In this document: positions 11,118 through 62,328 of the stretch, one piece after another
Numbering within the stretch: the stretch's first letter is position 1
Layout: each line of letters starts with the position of its first letter
Assembly (NCBI RefSeq): GCF_001194135.2
Contig: NC_068999.1
Location: 52,949,049-53,013,048, forward strand
Length of the DNA: 64,000 bases
Direction: 5' to 3'
From: Octopus bimaculoides
Taxonomy: Eukaryota
Notes under the pieces: model-generated
The model's input: only the letters and a program-made list of their open reading frames with translations
The model's database searches: none
Told to the model about the DNA's origin: nothing
Made by a program: the position numbers and the translations under genes

Positions 11118-11298
11118 AAAGGCGCAAGGCCTGAAATTATACATCGACACCAGTGTTTCACTGGTACTTAATTTATCGATCTGAAAAGATGAAGGGCAAA
11201 GTCAACTTCAGTCAAATTTGAACCAGAACGTAAAGACGGACGAAATGCCATTAAGAATTTTGACCGGCATGCTAACGGCTCTGCCAGATCGTCGCCTT
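11118..11298 (-). mobile_element. SINE family A copy
   Basis: ggtacttaatttatcgat..aaaagatgaagggcaaagtcaac...cagaacgtaaagacggacgaaatgcc...gctaacggctctgccag. Confidence 0.75.
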
Positions 11299-12002
11299 AC
11301 ACTTCATTATAATGATGAAAGAAAAATTCATGCTCTAACCGTCTGCACCACTCGCCCACACTTCATAAAAGCTTGGTATATTACGCTATCATTCACTTCT
11401 TACAAACTGTTCTCAGTTACAACGTAACAATATCAAAATGGCGGATATTGTGGGATAAAGAAAAACATTATGTAAAAGAAAATAAAACTACACAGAAAAG
11501 AAGCACGAACAGAAATATTAAGAGAAACAACAGCAACAATAACATCAACAACAACACCGACATAGTAATAAATGAAGAAACAACTGTTAGCATTAACGGT
11601 GACTCACATCTGTGCAATCAGACGAGTTCCAAGACTTGTGAATTTCGGGAGAATTCTACATTTTATTGGTTCGCTTCTTTTTGTGCGTAAATCATTTTTT
11701 ATTAATTTTTTTTTGTTTTGTTTGTGTGTGTGTGTATATTTTGCGTAACGTTAGTAAAGATAATTGGTTGTTGTTGTTGTAGATATTGTAGTTGCTGCTG
11801 CTGCTGCTGGTGTTGTTTTTGTTGTTGTCTTTGCTCTTGTGATTGGCGTTTCTTTTTTTTTATACGCTTTTTATAGATTTTCTATTTTCATTTCAGTAAA
11901 CATACATAATGAAGATATACACAAAATAAATCTATGCTTACATGTGTGCGTGTGTGCGTATGTGTATATGTGTGCGTGCGTATGTAAGTGTGTGATTGCA
12001 TG

Positions 12003-21821: not shown

Positions 21822-22024
21822 AAGGCGGCAAGCGGGTAGATTCGTTACCCCTCCGGGCCAAATTCTTAGCGGCATTTGTTCTATCTTTATGTTCTGAGTT
21901 CAAATTCCGCCGAGGTCGACTTTGCCTTTCATCTTTTCGCGACGGATGAAAATAAGTACTAGTCGATCTAATCGATTAGCCCACTTCCCCAAAATTTCAG
22001 ACCTTGTGCCTATAGTAGAAAGGA
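21822..22024 (+). mobile_element. SINE family A copy with a long (ATT)n tail
   Basis: Core gttctgagttcaaattccgccgaggtcgactttgcctttcatc; followed by about 180 nt of (ATT)n. Confidence 0.8.
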
Positions 22025-22051
22025 TTATTATTATTATTATTATTATTTTTA

Positions 22052-42299: not shown

Positions 42300-42411
42300 A
42301 ATGCGGAAAGACATTTCGCTGCGGAAATAGCCACGGGAGAACTTTCTCTGCACAGGCGTATGTGCAATCGTTTCGCCCGGCGTGCTAACGATTCTGCCAG
42401 CTCACCGCCTT
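42300..42411 (-). mobile_element. SINE family A 5' fragment
   Basis: tttcgcccggcgtgctaacgattctgccagctcaccgcctt. Confidence 0.65.
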
Positions 42412-47230: not shown

Positions 47231-47318
47231 CTCCACAGAATTTGAACTCAGAACGAAAAGACGGACGAAATAGCGCTAAGCGTTTTTCCCGTCGTACTAA
47301 CAATTCTGCCAGCTCACC
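47231..47318 (-). mobile_element. SINE family A 5' half, truncated by a gap
   Basis: gaatttgaactcagaacgaaaagacggacgaaatagcgctaagc...aattctgccagctcacc. Confidence 0.7.
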
Positions 47319-49526: not shown

Positions 49527-50424
49527 TGGTGCAAAATGCATAGTAACAACCTGTTCTTTTCCTTTTTCCATATATAACACCAATGCACACACACAATGCG
49601 CGTAGGATATATGTTTAATTAGGTCATAGTTAATCAATCGAGATATTCATTCAGCCACTATGGAAAATCATGATCACACATCCCGCCGGCCCCTTCTTTC
49701 TTAACTGCTCTCATATACTCGAATTTCCACCTTGCCTCTAACCTCCCGATCGCTTCTTTTTCTTCCACCACTTTTTCTCTTTCACGGTCCGTCTTTACTT
49801 TCTTCCTGTATCTTTCGTCTGATGAAAGACTAACACCCGAAACGTCAAGAGTCTTCCCATCCTATTCTGAACGTTAAACTAATACCTTTGTTAAAATTTG
49901 TCCTTCCCGTGTTGCCTTCTTCCATTTTGTGATCGTTGCTTTCACTATTCAATATATTCATTCATGAATACATACACACATACATACATATATTTATATA
50001 TACATATATACACACACATATACATGCATATATACATGCATACATACACTAGCACATTGTATATTGCAAGACATTATAGTAATTTCAAACACTATAAGAT
50101 TACATTTTGTAATGTGTTAAAGTGATGGCGGCGGCGGTGATGGTGGCGGTAGTAAAGACGTTAGTGTTGGTAGGTGGCGGTAACGATGGTGGTGATGATG
50201 GGAGTTGTGACAGTGCTGGTGGCGGTGGCGGCGGCGGCGGTACTCTTCCTGCCATTTGACAAAAGTACTCAAAGCTATTCCAACCATTTCAACAGAAAAC
50301 ACATGTCGATCACGTGATTCTTTTTATAATATTTTTTCTTTTTGTTCTTTTTTATTCCTTCATAATGGTATCGAGTGTTAACAGTTAGATGTATGGGTGT
50401 GTATGCGAACGTTTATTACTGTGA

Positions 50425-51864: not shown

Positions 51865-52128
51865 GTTTCAGATATTGGCAGAAGGCCAGTAATTTCGAGG
51901 GTGGAGATAATCCAGTAATAATGGTTTCAAATTTAGGCACGAGGCCAACAATTTCGGGATAAGGGATAAGTCAATTACGTTGACCACAGTACTCAACTAG
52001 TAGTTATTTTATCGAACCTGAAAGGATGAAAAGCGAAGTCGACTGCGGCGAATTTTTGAATTCAGAACGTAAAGGCGGTCGAAATGCTGCTAAGCTTTTA
52101 CCCAGCGTGCTAACGATTCTCCCAACTT
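51865..52128 (-). mobile_element. SINE family A copy with a duplicated 3' tail segment
   Basis: ggtttca.at.ttggca..aggcca.(c/t)aatttcg occurs twice (about 51865 and 51925), then the family A core. Confidence 0.7.
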
Positions 52129-52703
52129 ATCTAGTAATAATATCAATTTTAATACTGATAATAATCCTGTCTTAACAGGATTATTAACTTCTGAGTGGAG
52201 GATTAATACTAATTTTTTTTTAATCATGAGTACCACATACAAGTGAATAAATGCCTTTATAATTTCAAAAGCAAAATTATCTGTTCTTTAGAAAATCAAT
52301 GTTTAAGGAAGAGTTATAATGTATTAATGTAAGGTCATAACAGTGGATCTTACGTATTATTACATGGGTTAGTCCGCTACAACTTGAAAATCTAGATTAC
52401 ATAATCATTCTCATTCATTTAAGTATAGAAGAAAATGTAATTCTACGAATCTTAGTAAATGCATCTGGGATTTAAAAGACAGGACCATTAACTATGATTT
52501 AAAGTTGTTCGTTATTAATTACGCACCATGGTACAATGCTGGTGATATTAAATGTGGTCTTTTCTTTGAGAAATGTATTAAATTAAATTAAGCTTCACAG
52601 TATAAAGTATATATTAATATATAGTATTAGGGAAAAGAACCAAGTTTAATAAATTGATTTTAATTGAGTTTTTACCTGTAATTTTGGATTTTATCCCTAA
52701 TAT

Positions 52704-52859
<156 letters not shown>

Positions 52860-52922
52860 CATGTATGTATGTATATATGCATATATGAATATAATGTGTG
52901 TATGTGTTTATTAATCTCTCTA

Positions 52923-53640: not shown

Positions 53641-53957
53641 ACAAAAATCTGTTTAAGTGCAAGTGCTGCATTCTCCTATTTCTATTGTCACATTCACGAT
53701 GTTCCGCCGAAACAAAAATAGAAGGGCTTGCAACTACACAGATGACTAAAACCAAATAGCGAAAGCATGGTATACGCTGCCGCGCCATACTCGTGTGTAA
53801 GTAACGACATAGGTTTATTGAAATAAAGGTAATGACATAGATTTATTGAAAAAAAACCCCCAATGAAAGGGTTACGAGTACAACGCCGACTTTTCGGATA
53901 CCGATGGCCTGGAGTTTACTGACAACATACACATATACATACTAGCATATTAATCCT

Positions 53958-54087
53958 TTCTACTCTAGGCACAAGGCCTGGAATTTTGTGGGTGGAGGTT
54001 GGTTGATTACATCAATCCCAGTGTGTAACTGGTACTTTATTTTATCGACCTCAAAATGATGAAATGCAAAGTCAACCTCGGCGGAAA
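53958..54087 (-). mobile_element. SINE family A 3' half
   Basis: ctttctactctaggcacaaggcctg...actggtactttattttatcgacctc...gatgaaatgcaaagtcaacctcggcggaa. Confidence 0.7.
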
Positions 54088-55140
54088 TTTCAGTTTTAAA
54101 CAGATAATTTTATTTAAGCCAAGAAAATTGCTTTCGGTAAAATAAGATAAGTCAGGTGCTGGGGCACCGTCTTGAAAGACTCAGTCGAACAAATCGACGC
54201 CAGTTATTTATTTTTTTTAAAGCCTGGTACTTATTTTATCGGTTATTTGTTTTCCACCAAACTGCTAGGTTATGTTAACGCAAACAAACCAACAACGGGT
54301 GTCAAGGAACGTCACATATATATCAAACCAGAACTTAAATATGTAATTTAAGAATGTCAGTTAAATTCCTTAAGCTCCATAAATGATATCTCACTTAACA
54401 TTTGATATTTTAAAATGGCGTCTCTGAATGATTTTAAAGAAGAAAAGCCCGGTATATAAAGCAAGAGATTACACAAAGCTTTTATTAAATCTCGTAGGTT
54501 GAATATTGGTACAAAACAGAGATAAAGTAGTATATTTAATCGCTGATTTAAGACTGTTATATCCCTTGGTGCTTTGGGAATTATATCCTCACCATACAAA
54601 ATGGAGTGATAACTATTTCAACCACTATCATATTTGGTGACTAGATATATCACAAATGAAGGTGGCGATAGAGATACATCTATGTAGTGCTGGTTGTTAT
54701 TCTTGTAAAACTGAAGTGGCAGATGTGATATATATTTCGTAGACTGGTGCCCACGCCCACCACTGCGAAAATTAAAACTGAAAAGTAATTACGGCCATAT
54801 TGTCAACGCTAACAAATAGCTTTGAGTGCCATTTATCTACATTTCCATATATTTCAAATATGTATGCATGTATGTCTGTATGTATCTATCTATGTATGCA
54901 TGTATATACATATATGTATGTAAGTATATATATATATATATATATATATNNNNNNNNNNNNNNNNNNNNNNNNNNNNNNNNNNNNNNNNNNNNNNNNNNN
55001 NNNNNNNNNNNNNNNNNNNNNNNNNNNNNNNNNNNNNNNNNNNNNNNNNNNNNNNNNNNNNNNNNNNNNNGTGTGTACTGGGTTAAATGTTACCAGTAGC
55101 ACCCAAGAGCAACCTTACATACATACATACATACATACAC

Positions 55141-55171
<31 letters not shown>

Positions 55172-55294
55172 TACATATAATATAATGTTTGTTTTTATAT
55201 TTAGCTATAATAAAAACAATTTTATATTAATCTGAAGGGTTACTCTATACCTTTGTAGAGTATAAATTTATTATTCATTAACAAGAATAATATT

Positions 55295-55341
55295 GATAGT
55301 GACTTCGAAGTTTCAACCAGCTAAGTCATCTTCAGACAGTC
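55295..55341 (-). ncRNA. Second hammerhead ribozyme motif, inverted copy with a partly disrupted stem I
   Basis: Minus strand reads GACTGT CTGAAGA T GAC-TTAGCTG-GTT GAAAC-TTCGAA-GTC ACTATC. Stem III (ACTTCGAAGT) is a perfect palindrome; stem I pairs at only 4 of 6 positions. Confidence 0.55.
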
Positions 55342-55381
55342 TGATGATGGCTTAGATGGCCGAAACCTCGAAGTCACTGTC
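55335..55381 (+). ncRNA. Type I hammerhead ribozyme motif (Penelope-like-element minimal type)
   Basis: GACAGT [stem I] CTGATGA T GGC-TTAGATG-GCC [stem II] GAAAC-CTCGAA-GTC [stem III, cleavage triplet] ACTGTC [stem I 3' strand, perfect 6 bp]. Predicted cleavage after C55375. Confidence 0.75.
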
Positions 55382-55818
55382 AACAGTATTCTTGCTAAAG
55401 AATAATTTGTAAATAAATATATAAATTCTACTGTATCAAAAATAATGAACAGATGCTCCAACTGAATTTATTCCATGATAAACTCTATTTAAAAAAAGAA
55501 AAAAGAAAAAGGCTGAATCGTCACGGTTAGACCGTATTTCATAGGAGGTCTACTCAATCAGAGTTGACGTTTAAAGCAAAACAACAAAAATGATCAAATT
55601 TGAATGGCGAAAAAACTGGAGCAACGAAAGATTTCAAGTGTCCACAACCAATAAATCAGCGGAACAATTGATATCTCCAAGACATTGGAATATTTTTAGT
55701 TTGTGGTTTGGAATTAGAATTATTCAAAGATCAACAAAATAAGTCTTGTATTTTCACAATGCCTGAAAGTCTTGTTCTGTTGAATGGAACTTAATTGAGG
55801 AGAAAAACACGCGCTCGT

Positions 55819-55873
<55 letters not shown>

Positions 55874-56263
55874 CACAAACACACAAACACACACACACGC
55901 ACACACACACACACACACAAACCACACACACACACATACAAACACGCACTCATGCACATATAGATCTGAGTGTAGATGTGTATATATGTGTATCTATGTA
56001 TGAATGTGTACATGATATATATATGCATATGTAGGTATGTATGTGTATCTATACACACACATATACATACATACATGCGTACGCATACTTTTATATCATG
56101 GACGCACTCGTACAAGTACACATCTGTGTATATACGTATGTATACATATATATATATACATAGATATATATATATATGTGTGTGTGTATGCATGTATATA
56201 TATATATATATGTATATATGCATACATACAGAGAGAGATGTTTATATATATGTGTTTATATAC

Positions 56264-56345
<82 letters not shown>

Positions 56346-56395
56346 TTATATATATACATGTTTATATATATATACGTTTATATATATATACATGA

Positions 56396-56433
<38 letters not shown>

Positions 56434-56896
56434 GATACCTCACACACACACACATGTATGCACACGCACACATACAATCGTACACGCGAATATACGACGA
56501 TGGCCCAGTTTTCCAGAAAGCACTACATTCCAAAAGAATGGAAAAAAAAGAAAACAAAGAAAAGAAACCTGAAATAAAGATAAATTGATATTTATCCAAT
56601 AGATTTGCTCTTTATATAATTCGTTTCACCCCTTATAGACACATCTGATTGGTGTTGTCAGCTGCAGTTCAGCCCTTTCACACACGGGCGCGCGCGCAAA
56701 CGTACATAAGTGCGCGCGCACACACACACACATACACACATAAGCACACACTCACACACACAAAAAAACACACATAAAACACACACACACACGTACATAG
56801 ACTCTTAGGTATATATCTTCACATTCCCTTTCTCTCTCTCTCTCTCTCTCTTTCTCTAGTATTATTATCATCATCATCTTCACCATCATCATCATC

Positions 56897-56946
<50 letters not shown>

Positions 56947-57074
56947 TCGCTCTCTAAGGGCGAATTTTGGGATTTAAAATTGCAAATCTAATACTTTAAA
57001 TCAAAGAGCATCAATATGGCTTCCAAAATCCAAAGTGAAAATGGTAAATGCGCACACCGTCTCCGTTATATATT

Positions 57075-57288
57075 CTTTTCTACTCTAGACACAAAGCCCG
57101 AAATTTTGGGGTATGGGGTCAGTCGATGAGATCGACCCGAGTACGCGACGGGTACTTAATTAATGGATCCCGAAAGGATGAAAGGCAAAGTCGACCTCGG
57201 CGGAATTTGAACTCAGAACGTAAAGACAGACGAAATACTCCTAAATATTTCGCCCGGCGTGCTAACGATTCTGCCAGCTTCCCGCCTT
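57075..57288 (-). mobile_element. SINE family A, near full-length and well conserved
   Basis: Reverse complement reads aaggcgggaagctggcagaatcgttagcacgccgggcgaaat...ttctgagttcaaattccgccgaggtcgactttgcctttcatcctttcggg...gtacc...gtcgatc...aaatttcgggctttgtgtc; tRNA-like head. Confidence 0.8.
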
Positions 57289-57304
57289 GCCTCCATTATA
57301 TATT

Positions 57305-61619: not shown

Positions 61620-62200
61620 TAAAAAATCTGTGAGCCAAATTTAGCAGATCCCAAACCAAGTTGCTGCAATAATCCGCTATCATATGCACGTCACATCTGC
61701 TTTGATACTTTTGTTCAATTGATTTTATGTCCAGATGGAAACGTTTTCACTGCTCGTCGCATGTATCAACAAAATTTTCAAGGAATTTATCAAGGTGATT
61801 GCGCAGAGATAGTGCAGCTCATATTTGCTGCCAACTTTTGAAAGTTCTTCCGCATGTTGTGGACTATTTCGGCATTCTTGACTACTTTCTTGTTTCTCGA
61901 GAACTCATTTACAACTATCACAAATGAATTCTATGCTGCTGCTTGAATGTAATTACTTCAATTTTCTGAGTTAAGGTCCTTCAAACATTCCAGCTTTTAT
62001 CTTTTCACTTCTCAGACCGGAAAATGTGCTGCAGTTATAGTGAAAACATGGTCCATCATTATTCAGAGCTTTAACAAACTGCTTCATAATGCCAAGTTTG
62101 GTACGGAGTGGAAGTAGAATGGTTTTTCCCGGTTGAACCAAAGACTTTTCAATCACAATAAAAGACCCTGAAACTAATACTCGCCGCACCCAATTTTTTT
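61620..62200 (-). mobile_element. Decayed DNA transposase, Chapaev3-like (CMC-related) family
   Basis: Minus-strand translation ...SLVQPGKTILLPLRTKLGIMKQFVKALNNDGPCFHY...SEKIKAGMFEGP*LRKL...NHLDKFLENFVDTCDEQ*KRFHLDIKSIEQKYQSRCDVHMIADYC matches the recalled motifs LPPLHIKLGLMKQFVKAL, KAGIFDGPQIR and EQGERFHQDIK..E.RYQG.W...MMADYC. Contains stops and frameshifts. Family name is from memory. Confidence 0.8.
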
Positions 62201-62328
62201 CGCCTGGGACCGTAATCTTCCATGATGTTTGAACGCTTTTCCGTTGGACGTCTTCACCCTATTGGGGGATTGCAATGGTGGTGGTGGTGGTGGTGGTAGT
62301 GGTATACATCAAGTGTTTGAGATAAATC

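What the first reader, a model, noticed from the sequence alone, without database searches (positions are those of the whole stretch)
55255..55431. Head-to-head pair of hammerhead ribozymes forming a fold-back, joined at a GAC microhomology
Seen in sequence: the plus strand has a complete type I hammerhead (stem I GACAGT/ACTGTC, core CTGATGA...GAAAC, stem II GGC/GCC, stem III AC-CTCGAA-GT, GTC cleavage triplet at 55373-55375). The minus strand has a diverged sister (CTGAAGA, stem II GAC/GTT, perfectly palindromic stem III ACTTCGAAGT). Between the two copies the middle base pair of stem II shows a compensatory G-C to A-U change. The arms meet at TCAGAC-A-GTCTGA, so the GAC of one arm doubles as the start of stem I of the other, suggesting a template-switch fold-back. 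Established: Penelope-like elements and non-autonomous retrozymes carry minimal type I hammerheads with short palindromic stem III that can cleave as dimers, and PLE LTRs often occur inverted. Inference: this could be a self-cleaving, circRNA-forming retroelement remnant. A read-through transcript would instead fold into a long hairpin that sequesters the ribozyme and offers several A-C mismatches, a possible ADAR or Dicer substrate. The extra U after CUGANGA and the 3-bp stem II may lower activity.
Basis: partly seen in the sequence, partly recalled or inferred. Interest (0 to 1): 0.85.

Follow-up and report, generated by a model that had tools for sequence, protein, structure and literature searches.

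The report
Inverted hammerhead ribozyme retroelement remnant
A 137-base palindrome in a repeat-rich animal-type genome carries two back-to-back copies of a small self-cleaving "hammerhead" RNA motif of the kind found in Penelope-like retrotransposons, and is most likely a dead, truncated insertion, so it is real but ordinary.

Summary
The + strand at 55335-55381 has a complete type I hammerhead: 6-bp stem I, CUGAUGA, 4-bp stem II, GAAA, a 2-bp helix III with a near-palindromic loop, and a GUC site at 55373-55375. A strict descriptor finds it once in the window and never in 300 random sequences. A diverged copy lies on the - strand (55341-55295). The two copies overlap by 7 nt at GAC-A-GTC.

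The firm inverted repeat is 55270-55406 (68-nt arms, 84% complementary). The outer extension to 55255/55431 cannot be told from chance.

Three hallmarks match published hammerheads of Penelope-like elements (PLEs): an extra base between positions 9 and 10.1, a G10.1-C11.1 pair, and a palindromic helix III. PLE insertions are known to carry an adjacent inverted 5'-truncated copy and to target AT-rich DNA.

Several things argue against an active element:
- Rfam reports no hammerhead match.
- The window has no second copy, no tandem repeat and no PLE reading frame.
- Public collections gave no relatives.
- A read-through RNA folds into a -70 to -79 kcal/mol hairpin, against about -8 for the ribozyme fold.

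Verdict: a solitary, probably inert, head-to-head remnant of a hammerhead-bearing retroelement. It is a new member of a known kind, of modest interest.

The parts
55270..55406 (.). 137-bp imperfect palindrome: arms 55270-55337 and 55339-55406, centre A55338.
   Evidence: the repeat finder I1: 68 nt, 84% complementary, 1 nt spacer. The arm alignment shows firm homology ending at GAATAAT. As RNA it folds at -70.4 (+) and -78.8 (-) kcal/mol, z = -13 and -18.
55335..55381 (+). Complete type I hammerhead motif: stem I 55335-40/55376-81, core 55341-47, extra U 55348, stem II 55349-52/55358-61, GAAA 55362-65, helix III C55366-G55373 plus A55365-U55374, loop 55367-72. The predicted cut is 3' of C55375.
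   Evidence: Read directly from the sequence. It is the only hit of the strict descriptor, with 0 hits in 300 null sequences. The hammerhead fold scores -8.0 kcal/mol against an MFE of -11.4, and the centroid keeps stems I and II.
55295..55341 (-). Diverged sister hammerhead: core CUGAAGA 55335->55329, stem II GACU/GGUU, helix III palindrome ACUUCGAAGU 55311->55302, C17 opposite G55301. Stem I has only 4 of 6 pairs.
   Evidence: All invariant core bases are intact. The hammerhead fold scores +2.1 kcal/mol.
55335..55341 (.). Shared 7-nt junction GACAGTC. It serves as the 5' strand of stem I plus C3 for both copies, and is a near-palindrome with one central mismatch.
   Evidence: Sequence. The geometry is worked out in the full report.
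55387..55404 (+). AU-rich hairpin UAUUCUU-GCUA-AAGAAUA 3' of the ribozyme. The firm arm homology ends 2 nt after it.
   Evidence: Sequence. It mirrors 55272-55289 on the - strand, where the stem has one mismatch.
55272..55289 (-). The same 3' hairpin in the minus copy (UAUUCUU-GUUA-AUGAAUA, or the shifted form AUUAUUC/GAAUAAU).
   Evidence: Sequence.
55108..55269 (.). Left flank: (TACA)n/(TA)n microsatellite 55108-55185 followed by AT-rich DNA. This is the presumed AT-rich target, not part of the element.
   Evidence: the repeat finder D1/D2; sequence.
55407..55431 (.). Right flank, AT-rich. Its homology to the left flank is not significant in either orientation.

Best explanation
The locus is a solitary, inert remnant of a hammerhead-bearing retroelement of the Penelope-like (PLE) kind. 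It consists of two copies of the element's extreme 3' end. Each copy is a 47-nt hammerhead plus a 25-nt AU-rich hairpin, about 72 nt in all. The copies are joined head to head in AT-rich, microsatellite-flanked DNA.

Proposed origin (inferred). In one integration event both strands of the cut target primed reverse transcription, so two cDNAs ran inward. Both ended at the 5' edge of stem I, giving cDNA 3' ends of ...CAGACTGTC. That end is a near-palindrome, so the two ends annealed to each other over 7 nt with one central T.T mismatch, and were filled in. This reproduces the observed centre exactly. The plus copy keeps a perfect stem I. The minus copy carries a U in place of A at the centre.

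The ribozymes are features inherited from the parent element and do not work at this locus. They lie on opposite strands, each lacks a same-strand partner for the dimer that short-helix-III hammerheads need, and any read-through RNA is locked in a 68-bp hairpin.

What is shown: the motif, the palindrome, the junction geometry, and the lack of any coding partner or further copies in the window. What is inferred: PLE parentage and the two-strand priming and annealing steps.
For: The motif is real and non-random.

Hallmarks listed for PLE hammerheads in PMC4209133 are present: a base between positions 9 and 10.1, G10.1-C11.1 (plus copy), and a palindromic 15.2-16.2/loop 3. The Poseidon_Ac hammerhead, CUGAGGA-U-GCCUGCC-AUAGAU-GUGGGC-GAAAC-GUC, shares the extra U and a UAGAU loop II.

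The architecture matches published work. PLE insertions are heavily 5'-truncated and 'often' have an inverted 5'-truncated copy adjacent at the 5' end, with a bias for microsatellite or AT-rich targets (PMC8557442). Dual hammerheads on opposite strands 100-700 bp apart, and mostly solo motifs from truncated PLEs, were seen in Schistosoma (PMC4209133). Purified PAc protein cleaves and extends both DNA strands, prefers AT-rich DNA, and starts reverse transcription in a stem-loop downstream of the hammerhead (PMC11167929). Here a hairpin ends each arm.

The junction is a 7-nt near-palindrome shared by both copies.

The 7 differences inside the ribozyme spare every invariant base and break only one pair (P about 0.02-0.03). 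All 7 transitions between the arms run GC to AT in one direction. Both observations fit two already-distinct templates better than symmetric decay of identical arms.

The hairpin scores -70 to -79 kcal/mol against about -8 for the ribozyme fold.
Against: No PLE reverse transcriptase or GIY-YIG remnant is in the window, so parentage rests on motif hallmarks and the literature.

No other family member could be retrieved. There are none in the window, and public metagenome, viral and prokaryote scans gave only chance hits.

Rfam gives no hammerhead hit at all.

Helix I (6 bp) and helix II (4 bp) look more like the 'canonical' animal type I hammerhead of retrozymes than the long-helix-II minimal hammerheads of many PLEs.

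No significant target-site duplication is present.

Divergence inside the ribozyme (7/41) equals that outside it (4/25).

The two statistical hints are post hoc and come from a single locus.

The source organism was not identified with tools.
Confidence: 0.55

Rival explanations
1. The parentage is the same, but the palindrome arose later at the DNA level. A single solo hammerhead fragment (the right arm) was copied in inverted orientation by a replication or repair template switch at the GAC-A-GTC mini-palindrome. The arms then decayed in place.
For: The spacer is 1 nt and the junction has 3-nt microhomology. The plus copy has a perfect stem I, as expected of the original. The arms share the same outer limit, which any duplication gives automatically. 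Divergence is equal inside and outside the ribozyme.
Against: Random decay of identical arms should usually hit the core or stems (P about 0.02-0.03 for the observed pattern) and should not be directional (7:0 transitions, P about 0.016). Both tests are weak and post hoc. The model also does not explain why the copied segment ends right after the 3' hairpin.
Confidence: 0.25
2. It is a functional hairpin-RNA locus, such as a miRNA or endo-siRNA precursor or an ADAR substrate, that was exapted from an inverted repeat.
For: The hairpin is very stable on both strands (z = -13 and -18). Several Rfam miRNA models hit it at 30-40 bits.
Against: All the miRNA hits are far below gathering scores (89-100 bits). 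They are the generic response to any long palindrome, plus chance 11-mers. A 68-bp near-perfect stem with a 3-nt loop is not a canonical pre-miRNA. No conservation or expression data are available.
Confidence: 0.05
3. It is an active self-cleaving element: a retrozyme-like unit that cuts its RNA and forms circles, or a ribozyme pair regulating transcripts on both strands.
For: The plus copy is a flawless motif. The core is intact in both copies, and there is one compensatory pair change.
Against: The window holds no tandem direct repeat or second same-strand cleavage site, so no unit-length RNA can be released. Helix III is only 2 bp and needs a dimer. The plus helix III self-duplex is weak (-5.5 kcal/mol). 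The minus copy has 2 stem I mismatches and G10.1.U11.1. The competing hairpin is about 60 kcal/mol more stable. PLE-type hammerheads cleave poorly in vitro (PMC4209133), or only with the element's protein (PMC11167929).
Confidence: 0.05
4. It is a fold-back DNA transposon or MITE whose terminal inverted repeats happen to contain a hammerhead-like sequence.
For: The whole element is an inverted repeat in AT-rich DNA.
Against: There is no significant target-site duplication and no other copy in 64 kb. A full hammerhead is not expected by chance, and the PLE-type hallmarks are specific.
Confidence: 0.04

Closest known systems
Minimal/small type I hammerheads of Penelope-like elements (Cervera & De la Pena 2014, PMC4209133; from memory also Lunse, Weinberg & Breaker 2017, 'small hammerhead variants ... 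cleave RNA as dimers')
   Same: Type I topology. An unpaired base between A9 and 10.1. A G10.1-C11.1 pair. A very short helix III with palindromic sequence that implies dimer action. Mostly solo copies from truncated elements, with occasional pairs on opposite strands. Loop II UAGAU resembles the AUAGAU of Poseidon_Ac.
   Different: Helix II is 4 bp here (7-8 bp in many PLE minimal hammerheads) and helix I is a full 6 bp. Loop 3 is 6 nt. No pLTR or RT-EN frame is nearby. The two copies overlap at zero distance rather than lying 100-700 bp apart.
Canonical metazoan type I hammerheads in non-LTR retrozymes (Cervera & De la Pena 2020, PMC7229834; bioRxiv 10.64898/2026.07.22.740005 links them to PLE pLTRs)
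   Same: Helix I is 6 bp, helix II is 4 bp, helix III is 1-2 bp with a palindromic cap, and the context has low GC.
   Different: Retrozymes are head-to-tail tandem repeats of about 170-400 bp that release circular RNAs. Here there is one inverted pair of 72-nt fragments and no tandem copy.
PLE insertion architecture and mechanism (Craig et al. 2021, PMC8557442; PAc in vitro system, PMC11167929)
   Same: An inverted 5'-truncated copy abuts the 5' end. The target is AT-rich or microsatellite DNA. The hammerhead lies near the 3' end. The protein cuts and extends both strands, and reverse transcription starts at a stem-loop downstream of the hammerhead.
   Different: Both copies are truncated to the last ~72 nt, so no element body is left. 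The 3' end lies 31 nt after the cut site, against about 85-92 nt in PAc. The 'tail' and target duplication could not be resolved.
Twin priming of LINE-1 (inverted/truncated insertions joined at microhomology; recalled from memory, not checked here)
   Same: Two cDNAs are primed from the two ends of a target break and joined head to head at a few bases of microhomology.
   Different: It is a different element class and enzyme. L1 twin priming copies one RNA at two positions and gives an inversion, not a true palindrome of the same segment.

Membership tests
Hammerhead ribozyme, type I (structural definition) | Invariant core C3 U4 G5 A6 N7 G8 A9 / G12 A13 A14 / A15.1-U16.1 / H17 | tested here: met
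   All are present in both copies. The only core difference is at the free position N7 (U against A).
Hammerhead ribozyme, type I (structural definition) | Three helices around the core, open at helix I | tested here: met
   The plus copy has 6 + 4 + 2 bp, and the strict descriptor gave 0 hits in 300 null sequences. The minus copy meets this only partly: stem I has 4 of 6 pairs and stem II has two G.U pairs.
Hammerhead ribozyme, type I (structural definition) | Site-specific self-cleavage 3' of position 17 | not testable with these tools
   This needs in vitro transcription and cleavage of 55325-55395 (+).
Rfam Hammerhead_1 (RF00163) and other Rfam hammerhead models | Covariance-model score at or above the gathering threshold | tested here: not met
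   No hammerhead family was reported at gathering score, nor at E<=10 in 629 nt or 108 nt. No positive control could be run to show whether the models can see such minimal variants.
PLE-associated hammerhead (PMC4209133) | [quoted passage not shown] | tested here: met
   U55348 in the plus copy and the mirrored U in the minus copy.
PLE-associated hammerhead (PMC4209133) | Conserved G10.1-C11.1 pair | tested here: met
   The plus copy has G55349-C55361. The minus copy has G.U instead.
PLE-associated hammerhead (PMC4209133) | Palindromic 15.2-16.2 and loop 3 (dimer-forming helix III) | tested here: met
   The minus copy has the perfect 10-nt palindrome ACUUCGAAGU (self-duplex -13.9 kcal/mol). 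The plus copy has ACCUCGAAGU, 8 of 10 (-5.5).
PLE-associated hammerhead (PMC4209133) | Location in the pLTR/3' end of an element that encodes RT plus a GIY-YIG endonuclease | tested here: not met
   tblastn with the Poseidon_Ac ORF against the whole window gave only one chance hit at E = 4.4. No long ORF flanks the locus. Solo motifs are the commonest state in the literature, so this lowers proof of membership without excluding descent.
PLE-associated hammerhead (PMC4209133) | Multi-copy genome family showing covariation | not testable with these tools
   The source genome is not available. There is no other copy in the 64 kb, and public scans gave only chance hits.
PLE insertion architecture (PMC8557442, PMC11167929) | Inverted 5'-truncated copy adjacent at the 5' end | tested here: met
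   The arms are head to head with a 1-nt spacer, and both are truncated at the 5' edge of the hammerhead.
PLE insertion architecture (PMC8557442, PMC11167929) | AT-rich or microsatellite target, with an optional tail or target duplication | tested here: inconclusive
   The flanks are AT-rich and there is a (TACA)n tract 85 nt away. The candidate direct repeat TTTGTA...TATAAATT is not significant (P about 0.2).
Non-LTR retrozyme (PMC7229834) | Head-to-tail tandem repeats (about 170-400 bp), each with a type I hammerhead | tested here: not met
   The only direct repeats are microsatellites, and there is no second same-strand copy in the window.
Non-LTR retrozyme (PMC7229834) | Expression as linear and circular unit-length RNAs | not testable with these tools
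   No transcriptome data are available.
miRNA precursor families (Rfam mir-942, mir-2513 and others) | Score at or above the gathering threshold | tested here: not met
   The best scores are 40.3-40.6 bits against thresholds of 89-100.

The most novel reading that the evidence does not exclude
The junction may be a molecular fossil of how Penelope-like elements make their inverted repeats. Two reverse transcripts, primed on the two strands of one target break, both ran to an RNA 5' end that coincides with the first base of hammerhead stem I. They then annealed through the stem's own GAC-N-GUC near-palindrome. If many inverted pairs in the genome share this junction, the template RNA would have a defined 5' end at the ribozyme. 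The ribozyme's stem I sequence would then have a second role in joining the two cDNAs. A still bolder variant is that both ribozymes have been kept by selection at this locus.
Probability: 0.12. Interest if true: 0.55.

Novelty: new member of a known kind. Interest (0 to 1): 0.3.

Why it matters
Thousands of such hammerhead motifs are already catalogued in animal genomes, mostly as debris of Penelope-like elements and retrozymes. One more solitary copy changes little.

The locus is a clean, minimal example of the head-to-head architecture. The two ribozymes share seven bases, and the join falls in a near-palindrome. If the same join recurs genome-wide, it would give sequence-level support for the two-strand priming seen in vitro with the Anolis element, and would say where the template RNA starts.

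It also illustrates that curated Rfam models can miss these minimal variants entirely.

Tried and rejected
- **Rfam at three settings**. No hammerhead hit appeared. The sub-threshold miRNA hits were rejected as generic palindrome matches with chance 11-mers.
- **Other copies in the window**, by blastn with word size 7. Only the self and inverted hit were found, plus AT-rich noise.
- **Other hammerhead-like strings in the window**. CTGATGA...GAAACGTC at 49819 lacks stem II and was rejected.
- **Public DNA scans.** The family-specific pattern gave 0 hits in metagenomes. The broader pattern gave 2 metagenome hits (L001, L002), 0 viral hits and 1 bacterial hit (L003). None has stem I or II, so all are chance.
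- **PLE coding remnants.** tblastn with Poseidon_Ac found nothing. Pfam on 10 non-repetitive ORFs gave only a sub-threshold ARPC3-like hit.
- **Organism identification.** Three window ORFs are not on record. One protein search gave a single 55%-identical hit in an unrelated ENA contig with no DNA similarity to the window. The organism stays unverified. The SINE and microsatellite content recall octopus genomes, but that is from memory only.
- **Literature string search** for the ribozyme sequence: 0 papers.
- **Target-site duplication or an outer extension of the arms**: not significant.
- **Translating the arms to fish for other copies in the protein database** was considered and dropped. The family-specific part is only about 22 aa.

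Full report
**1. What is in the sequence**

The window is a gapped, AT-rich (36% GC) eukaryotic draft. It has 21 runs of N and dense microsatellites. At 55270-55406 lies a 137-bp imperfect palindrome. Its arms are 55270-55337 and 55339-55406: 68 nt, 84% complementary, one base between them.

Reading the right arm on the + strand gives a textbook type I hammerhead:
- stem I: GACAGU (55335-40) paired with ACUGUC (55376-81)
- core: CUGAUGA (55341-47)
- one extra U (55348)
- stem II: GGCU/GGCC with loop UAGAU
- GAAA (55362-65)
- helix III: only A-U and C-G, closed by CUCGAA
- cleavage triplet: GUC at 55373-75

The left arm read on the - strand gives a sister copy. It has CUGAAGA, stem II GACU/GGUU, the perfect palindrome ACUUCGAAGU as helix III, and a stem I with only 4 of 6 pairs.

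**2. Is it more than chance?**

A strict descriptor required a 5-bp stem I, a 3-bp stem II with an optional extra base, the full core, and U16.1 followed by a non-G. It finds the plus copy and nothing else on either strand of the window. It found nothing in 300 Markov-simulated windows.

The arms differ at 11 of 68 positions, so this is not a fold-back artefact of sequencing or assembly.

They align no better than shuffled sequence, whether read as an inverted repeat (P about 0.29) or as a direct repeat that might be a target duplication (P about 0.20). The feature is therefore 55270-55406.

**3. What the databases say**

Rfam 15 reports no hammerhead family. This holds at gathering score over the whole window and at E<=10 when only 629 or 108 nt are given. 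The only matches are miRNA-precursor models at 30-40 bits against thresholds of 89-100. Any long palindrome gets such scores.

I could not run a positive control. This therefore counts as 'Rfam membership not met'. It does not mean 'not a hammerhead'. The literature found these minimal variants with hand-written descriptors, not with Rfam models (PMC4209133).

**4. Context and relatives**

- blastn finds no other copy of the 206-nt region in the 64 kb, apart from its own inverted arm.
- tblastn with the 846-aa Poseidon_Ac protein, taken from the supplement of PMC11167929, finds no reverse-transcriptase or GIY-YIG remnant in the window.
- The flanks have no non-repetitive ORF.
- Pattern scans of public metagenome, viral and prokaryotic collections gave nothing or chance hits without the stems.
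- The source organism could not be established.

Family-level evidence, meaning copy number, covariation and linkage to coding elements, is therefore out of reach with these tools. The classification rests on anatomy and on the literature.

**5. Anatomy against the literature**

Cervera & De la Pena (PMC4209133) list features that recur in PLE hammerheads but were not built into their search descriptor. [quoted passage not shown] All three are present here.

It is in fact a hallmark. The Poseidon_Ac hammerhead also has the extra U and a UAGAU-containing loop II.

Helix I (6 bp) and helix II (4 bp) are closer to the 'canonical' animal type I motif found in retrozymes (PMC7229834). A 2026 preprint derives retrozymes from PLE pLTRs. 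However, retrozymes are head-to-tail tandems, and no tandem copy exists here.

The head-to-head arrangement is a known PLE signature:
- Insertions are strongly 5'-truncated.
- Targets are biased to microsatellites (PMC8557442).

In Schistosoma most motifs are solo, and some pairs lie on opposite strands 100-700 bp apart. The present locus is the zero-distance extreme of that series.

**6. The junction**

The two motifs overlap by 7 nt, 55335-55341 (GACAGTC). The 5' strand of each copy's stem I is the complement of the other's. GACAGUC is itself a near-palindrome, GAC-N-GUC.

Suppose two cDNAs of the same RNA both end at the first base of stem I. Their 3' ends (...GACTGTC) can then anneal to each other over 7 nt with one central T.T mismatch. 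Fill-in gives exactly the observed centre. One copy (plus) keeps A and a perfect stem I. The other carries U there. With its later G-to-A change it ends up at 4 of 6 pairs.

The alternative is that two independently truncated copies were blunt-joined. In that case the perfect 6-bp stem I of the plus copy would be a coincidence of roughly 1 in 100-250. A microhomology-guided join in this near-palindrome is therefore well supported by the geometry.

Whether the join happened at integration or later, by a DNA template switch, is not settled. The PAc protein cleaves and extends both target strands, prefers AT-rich DNA, and starts reverse transcription at a stem-loop downstream of the hammerhead (PMC11167929). 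That gives a ready mechanism for the first option. Here, firm arm homology ends 2 nt after an AU-rich hairpin, 31 nt past the cut site.

**7. Differences between the arms**

Seven differences fall in the 41 nt of ribozyme that belong to the arm proper:
- N7 (a free position)
- one in loop 2
- one in loop 3
- the compensatory G-C to A-U change at 10.2/11.2, which accounts for two of the seven
- C11.1 to U, giving a G.U pair
- one disruptive G to A in stem I

Placing seven substitutions at random leaves the core intact with at most one broken pair in only 2-3% of trials.

Separately, all seven transitions in the 68-nt arms run from G/C in the plus copy to A/T in the minus copy (sign test about 0.016).

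Both observations argue mildly against symmetric neutral decay of two initially identical arms. They are compatible with two distinct source RNAs. They are also post hoc and come from one locus. In addition, divergence inside the ribozyme (7/41) is no lower than outside it (4/25). I treat this as unexplained rather than as evidence of function.

**8. Can it work here?**

Short-helix-III hammerheads need a second copy on the same RNA, or in trans, to form an extended helix III (PMC4209133, PMC7229834). Here the partner is on the other strand.

The self-duplex of the plus helix III is weak, at -5.5 kcal/mol against -13.9 for the minus palindrome.

A transcript crossing the locus folds into a hairpin of -70.4 (+) or -78.8 (-) kcal/mol (z = -13 and -18). 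The hammerhead fold of the isolated plus motif is -8.0 kcal/mol and that of the minus motif is +2.1. Self-cleavage at this locus is therefore unlikely.

The hairpin does contain 5 A.C mismatches on the + strand and 2 on the - strand. Whether anything edits or dices it cannot be tested here.

**9. Verdict**

It over-reaches on activity, circular RNA and boundaries.

The best reading is a solitary, inert, head-to-head remnant of a hammerhead-bearing Penelope-like retroelement or its non-autonomous derivative. It is a new member of a known kind. Its only special value is as a minimal, cleanly readable example of the inverted-copy junction.

Noticed in passing
57070-57300, 21822-22028, 36773-36939, 51925-52128, 39511-39617, 39721-39845, 11160-11311, 2154-2470, 29106-29249, 53951-54089, 47238-47314, 42371-42411: A ~220-bp SINE-like repeat (core ...GGATGAAAGGCAAAGTCGACCTCGGCGGAATTTGAACTCAGAACGTAAAG...GCCCGGCGTGCTAAC...) occurs at least 14 times at 73-86% identity. 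From memory it resembles the abundant octopus SINE. The organism was not verified.
   Followed up: partly
whole window, e.g. 55108-55185, 55720-56600, 52650-52900: The microsatellite load is very high ((TG)n, (TATG)n, (TACA)n, homopolymer-codon runs). There are also 21 assembly gaps totalling 6645 N, one of them (54950-55070) only 200 nt left of the palindrome.
   Followed up: no
55270-55406: All 7 transitions between the two arms run G/C (right arm, plus copy) to A/T (left arm, minus copy). GC is 41% against 31%. The cause of this one-sided AT-drift, or of editing in one arm, is unexplained.
   Followed up: partly
61974-62258 (-): A 95-aa ORF fragment (…KQFVKALNNDGPCFHYNCSTFSGLRSEKIKAGMFEGP) has no Pfam match. 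Its one database relative is 55% identical (P0001, 160 aa), on a 228-kb AT-rich contig of ENA assembly ERZ25067576 (L004). It is probably a decayed transposon gene.
   Followed up: partly
55290-55386: Rfam miRNA models mir-942 and mir-2513 score about 40 bits on the palindrome and share 11-nt strings with it (AUGGCCGAAAC; GUCUGAAGAUG). Given the number of hairpin models and the palindromic target, this is judged to be chance.
   Followed up: partly
29345-29746 (+): There is a weak, sub-threshold Pfam match to ARPC3/P21-Arc (E = 1.6e-4, 22.3 bits against a cutoff of 25). The ORF partly overlaps SINE-like sequence, so the match is probably spurious.
   Followed up: no
49819-49860 (+): The string CTGATGA...GAAACGTC mimics hammerhead core boxes but has no stem II pairing. 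It is not a ribozyme.
   Followed up: yes
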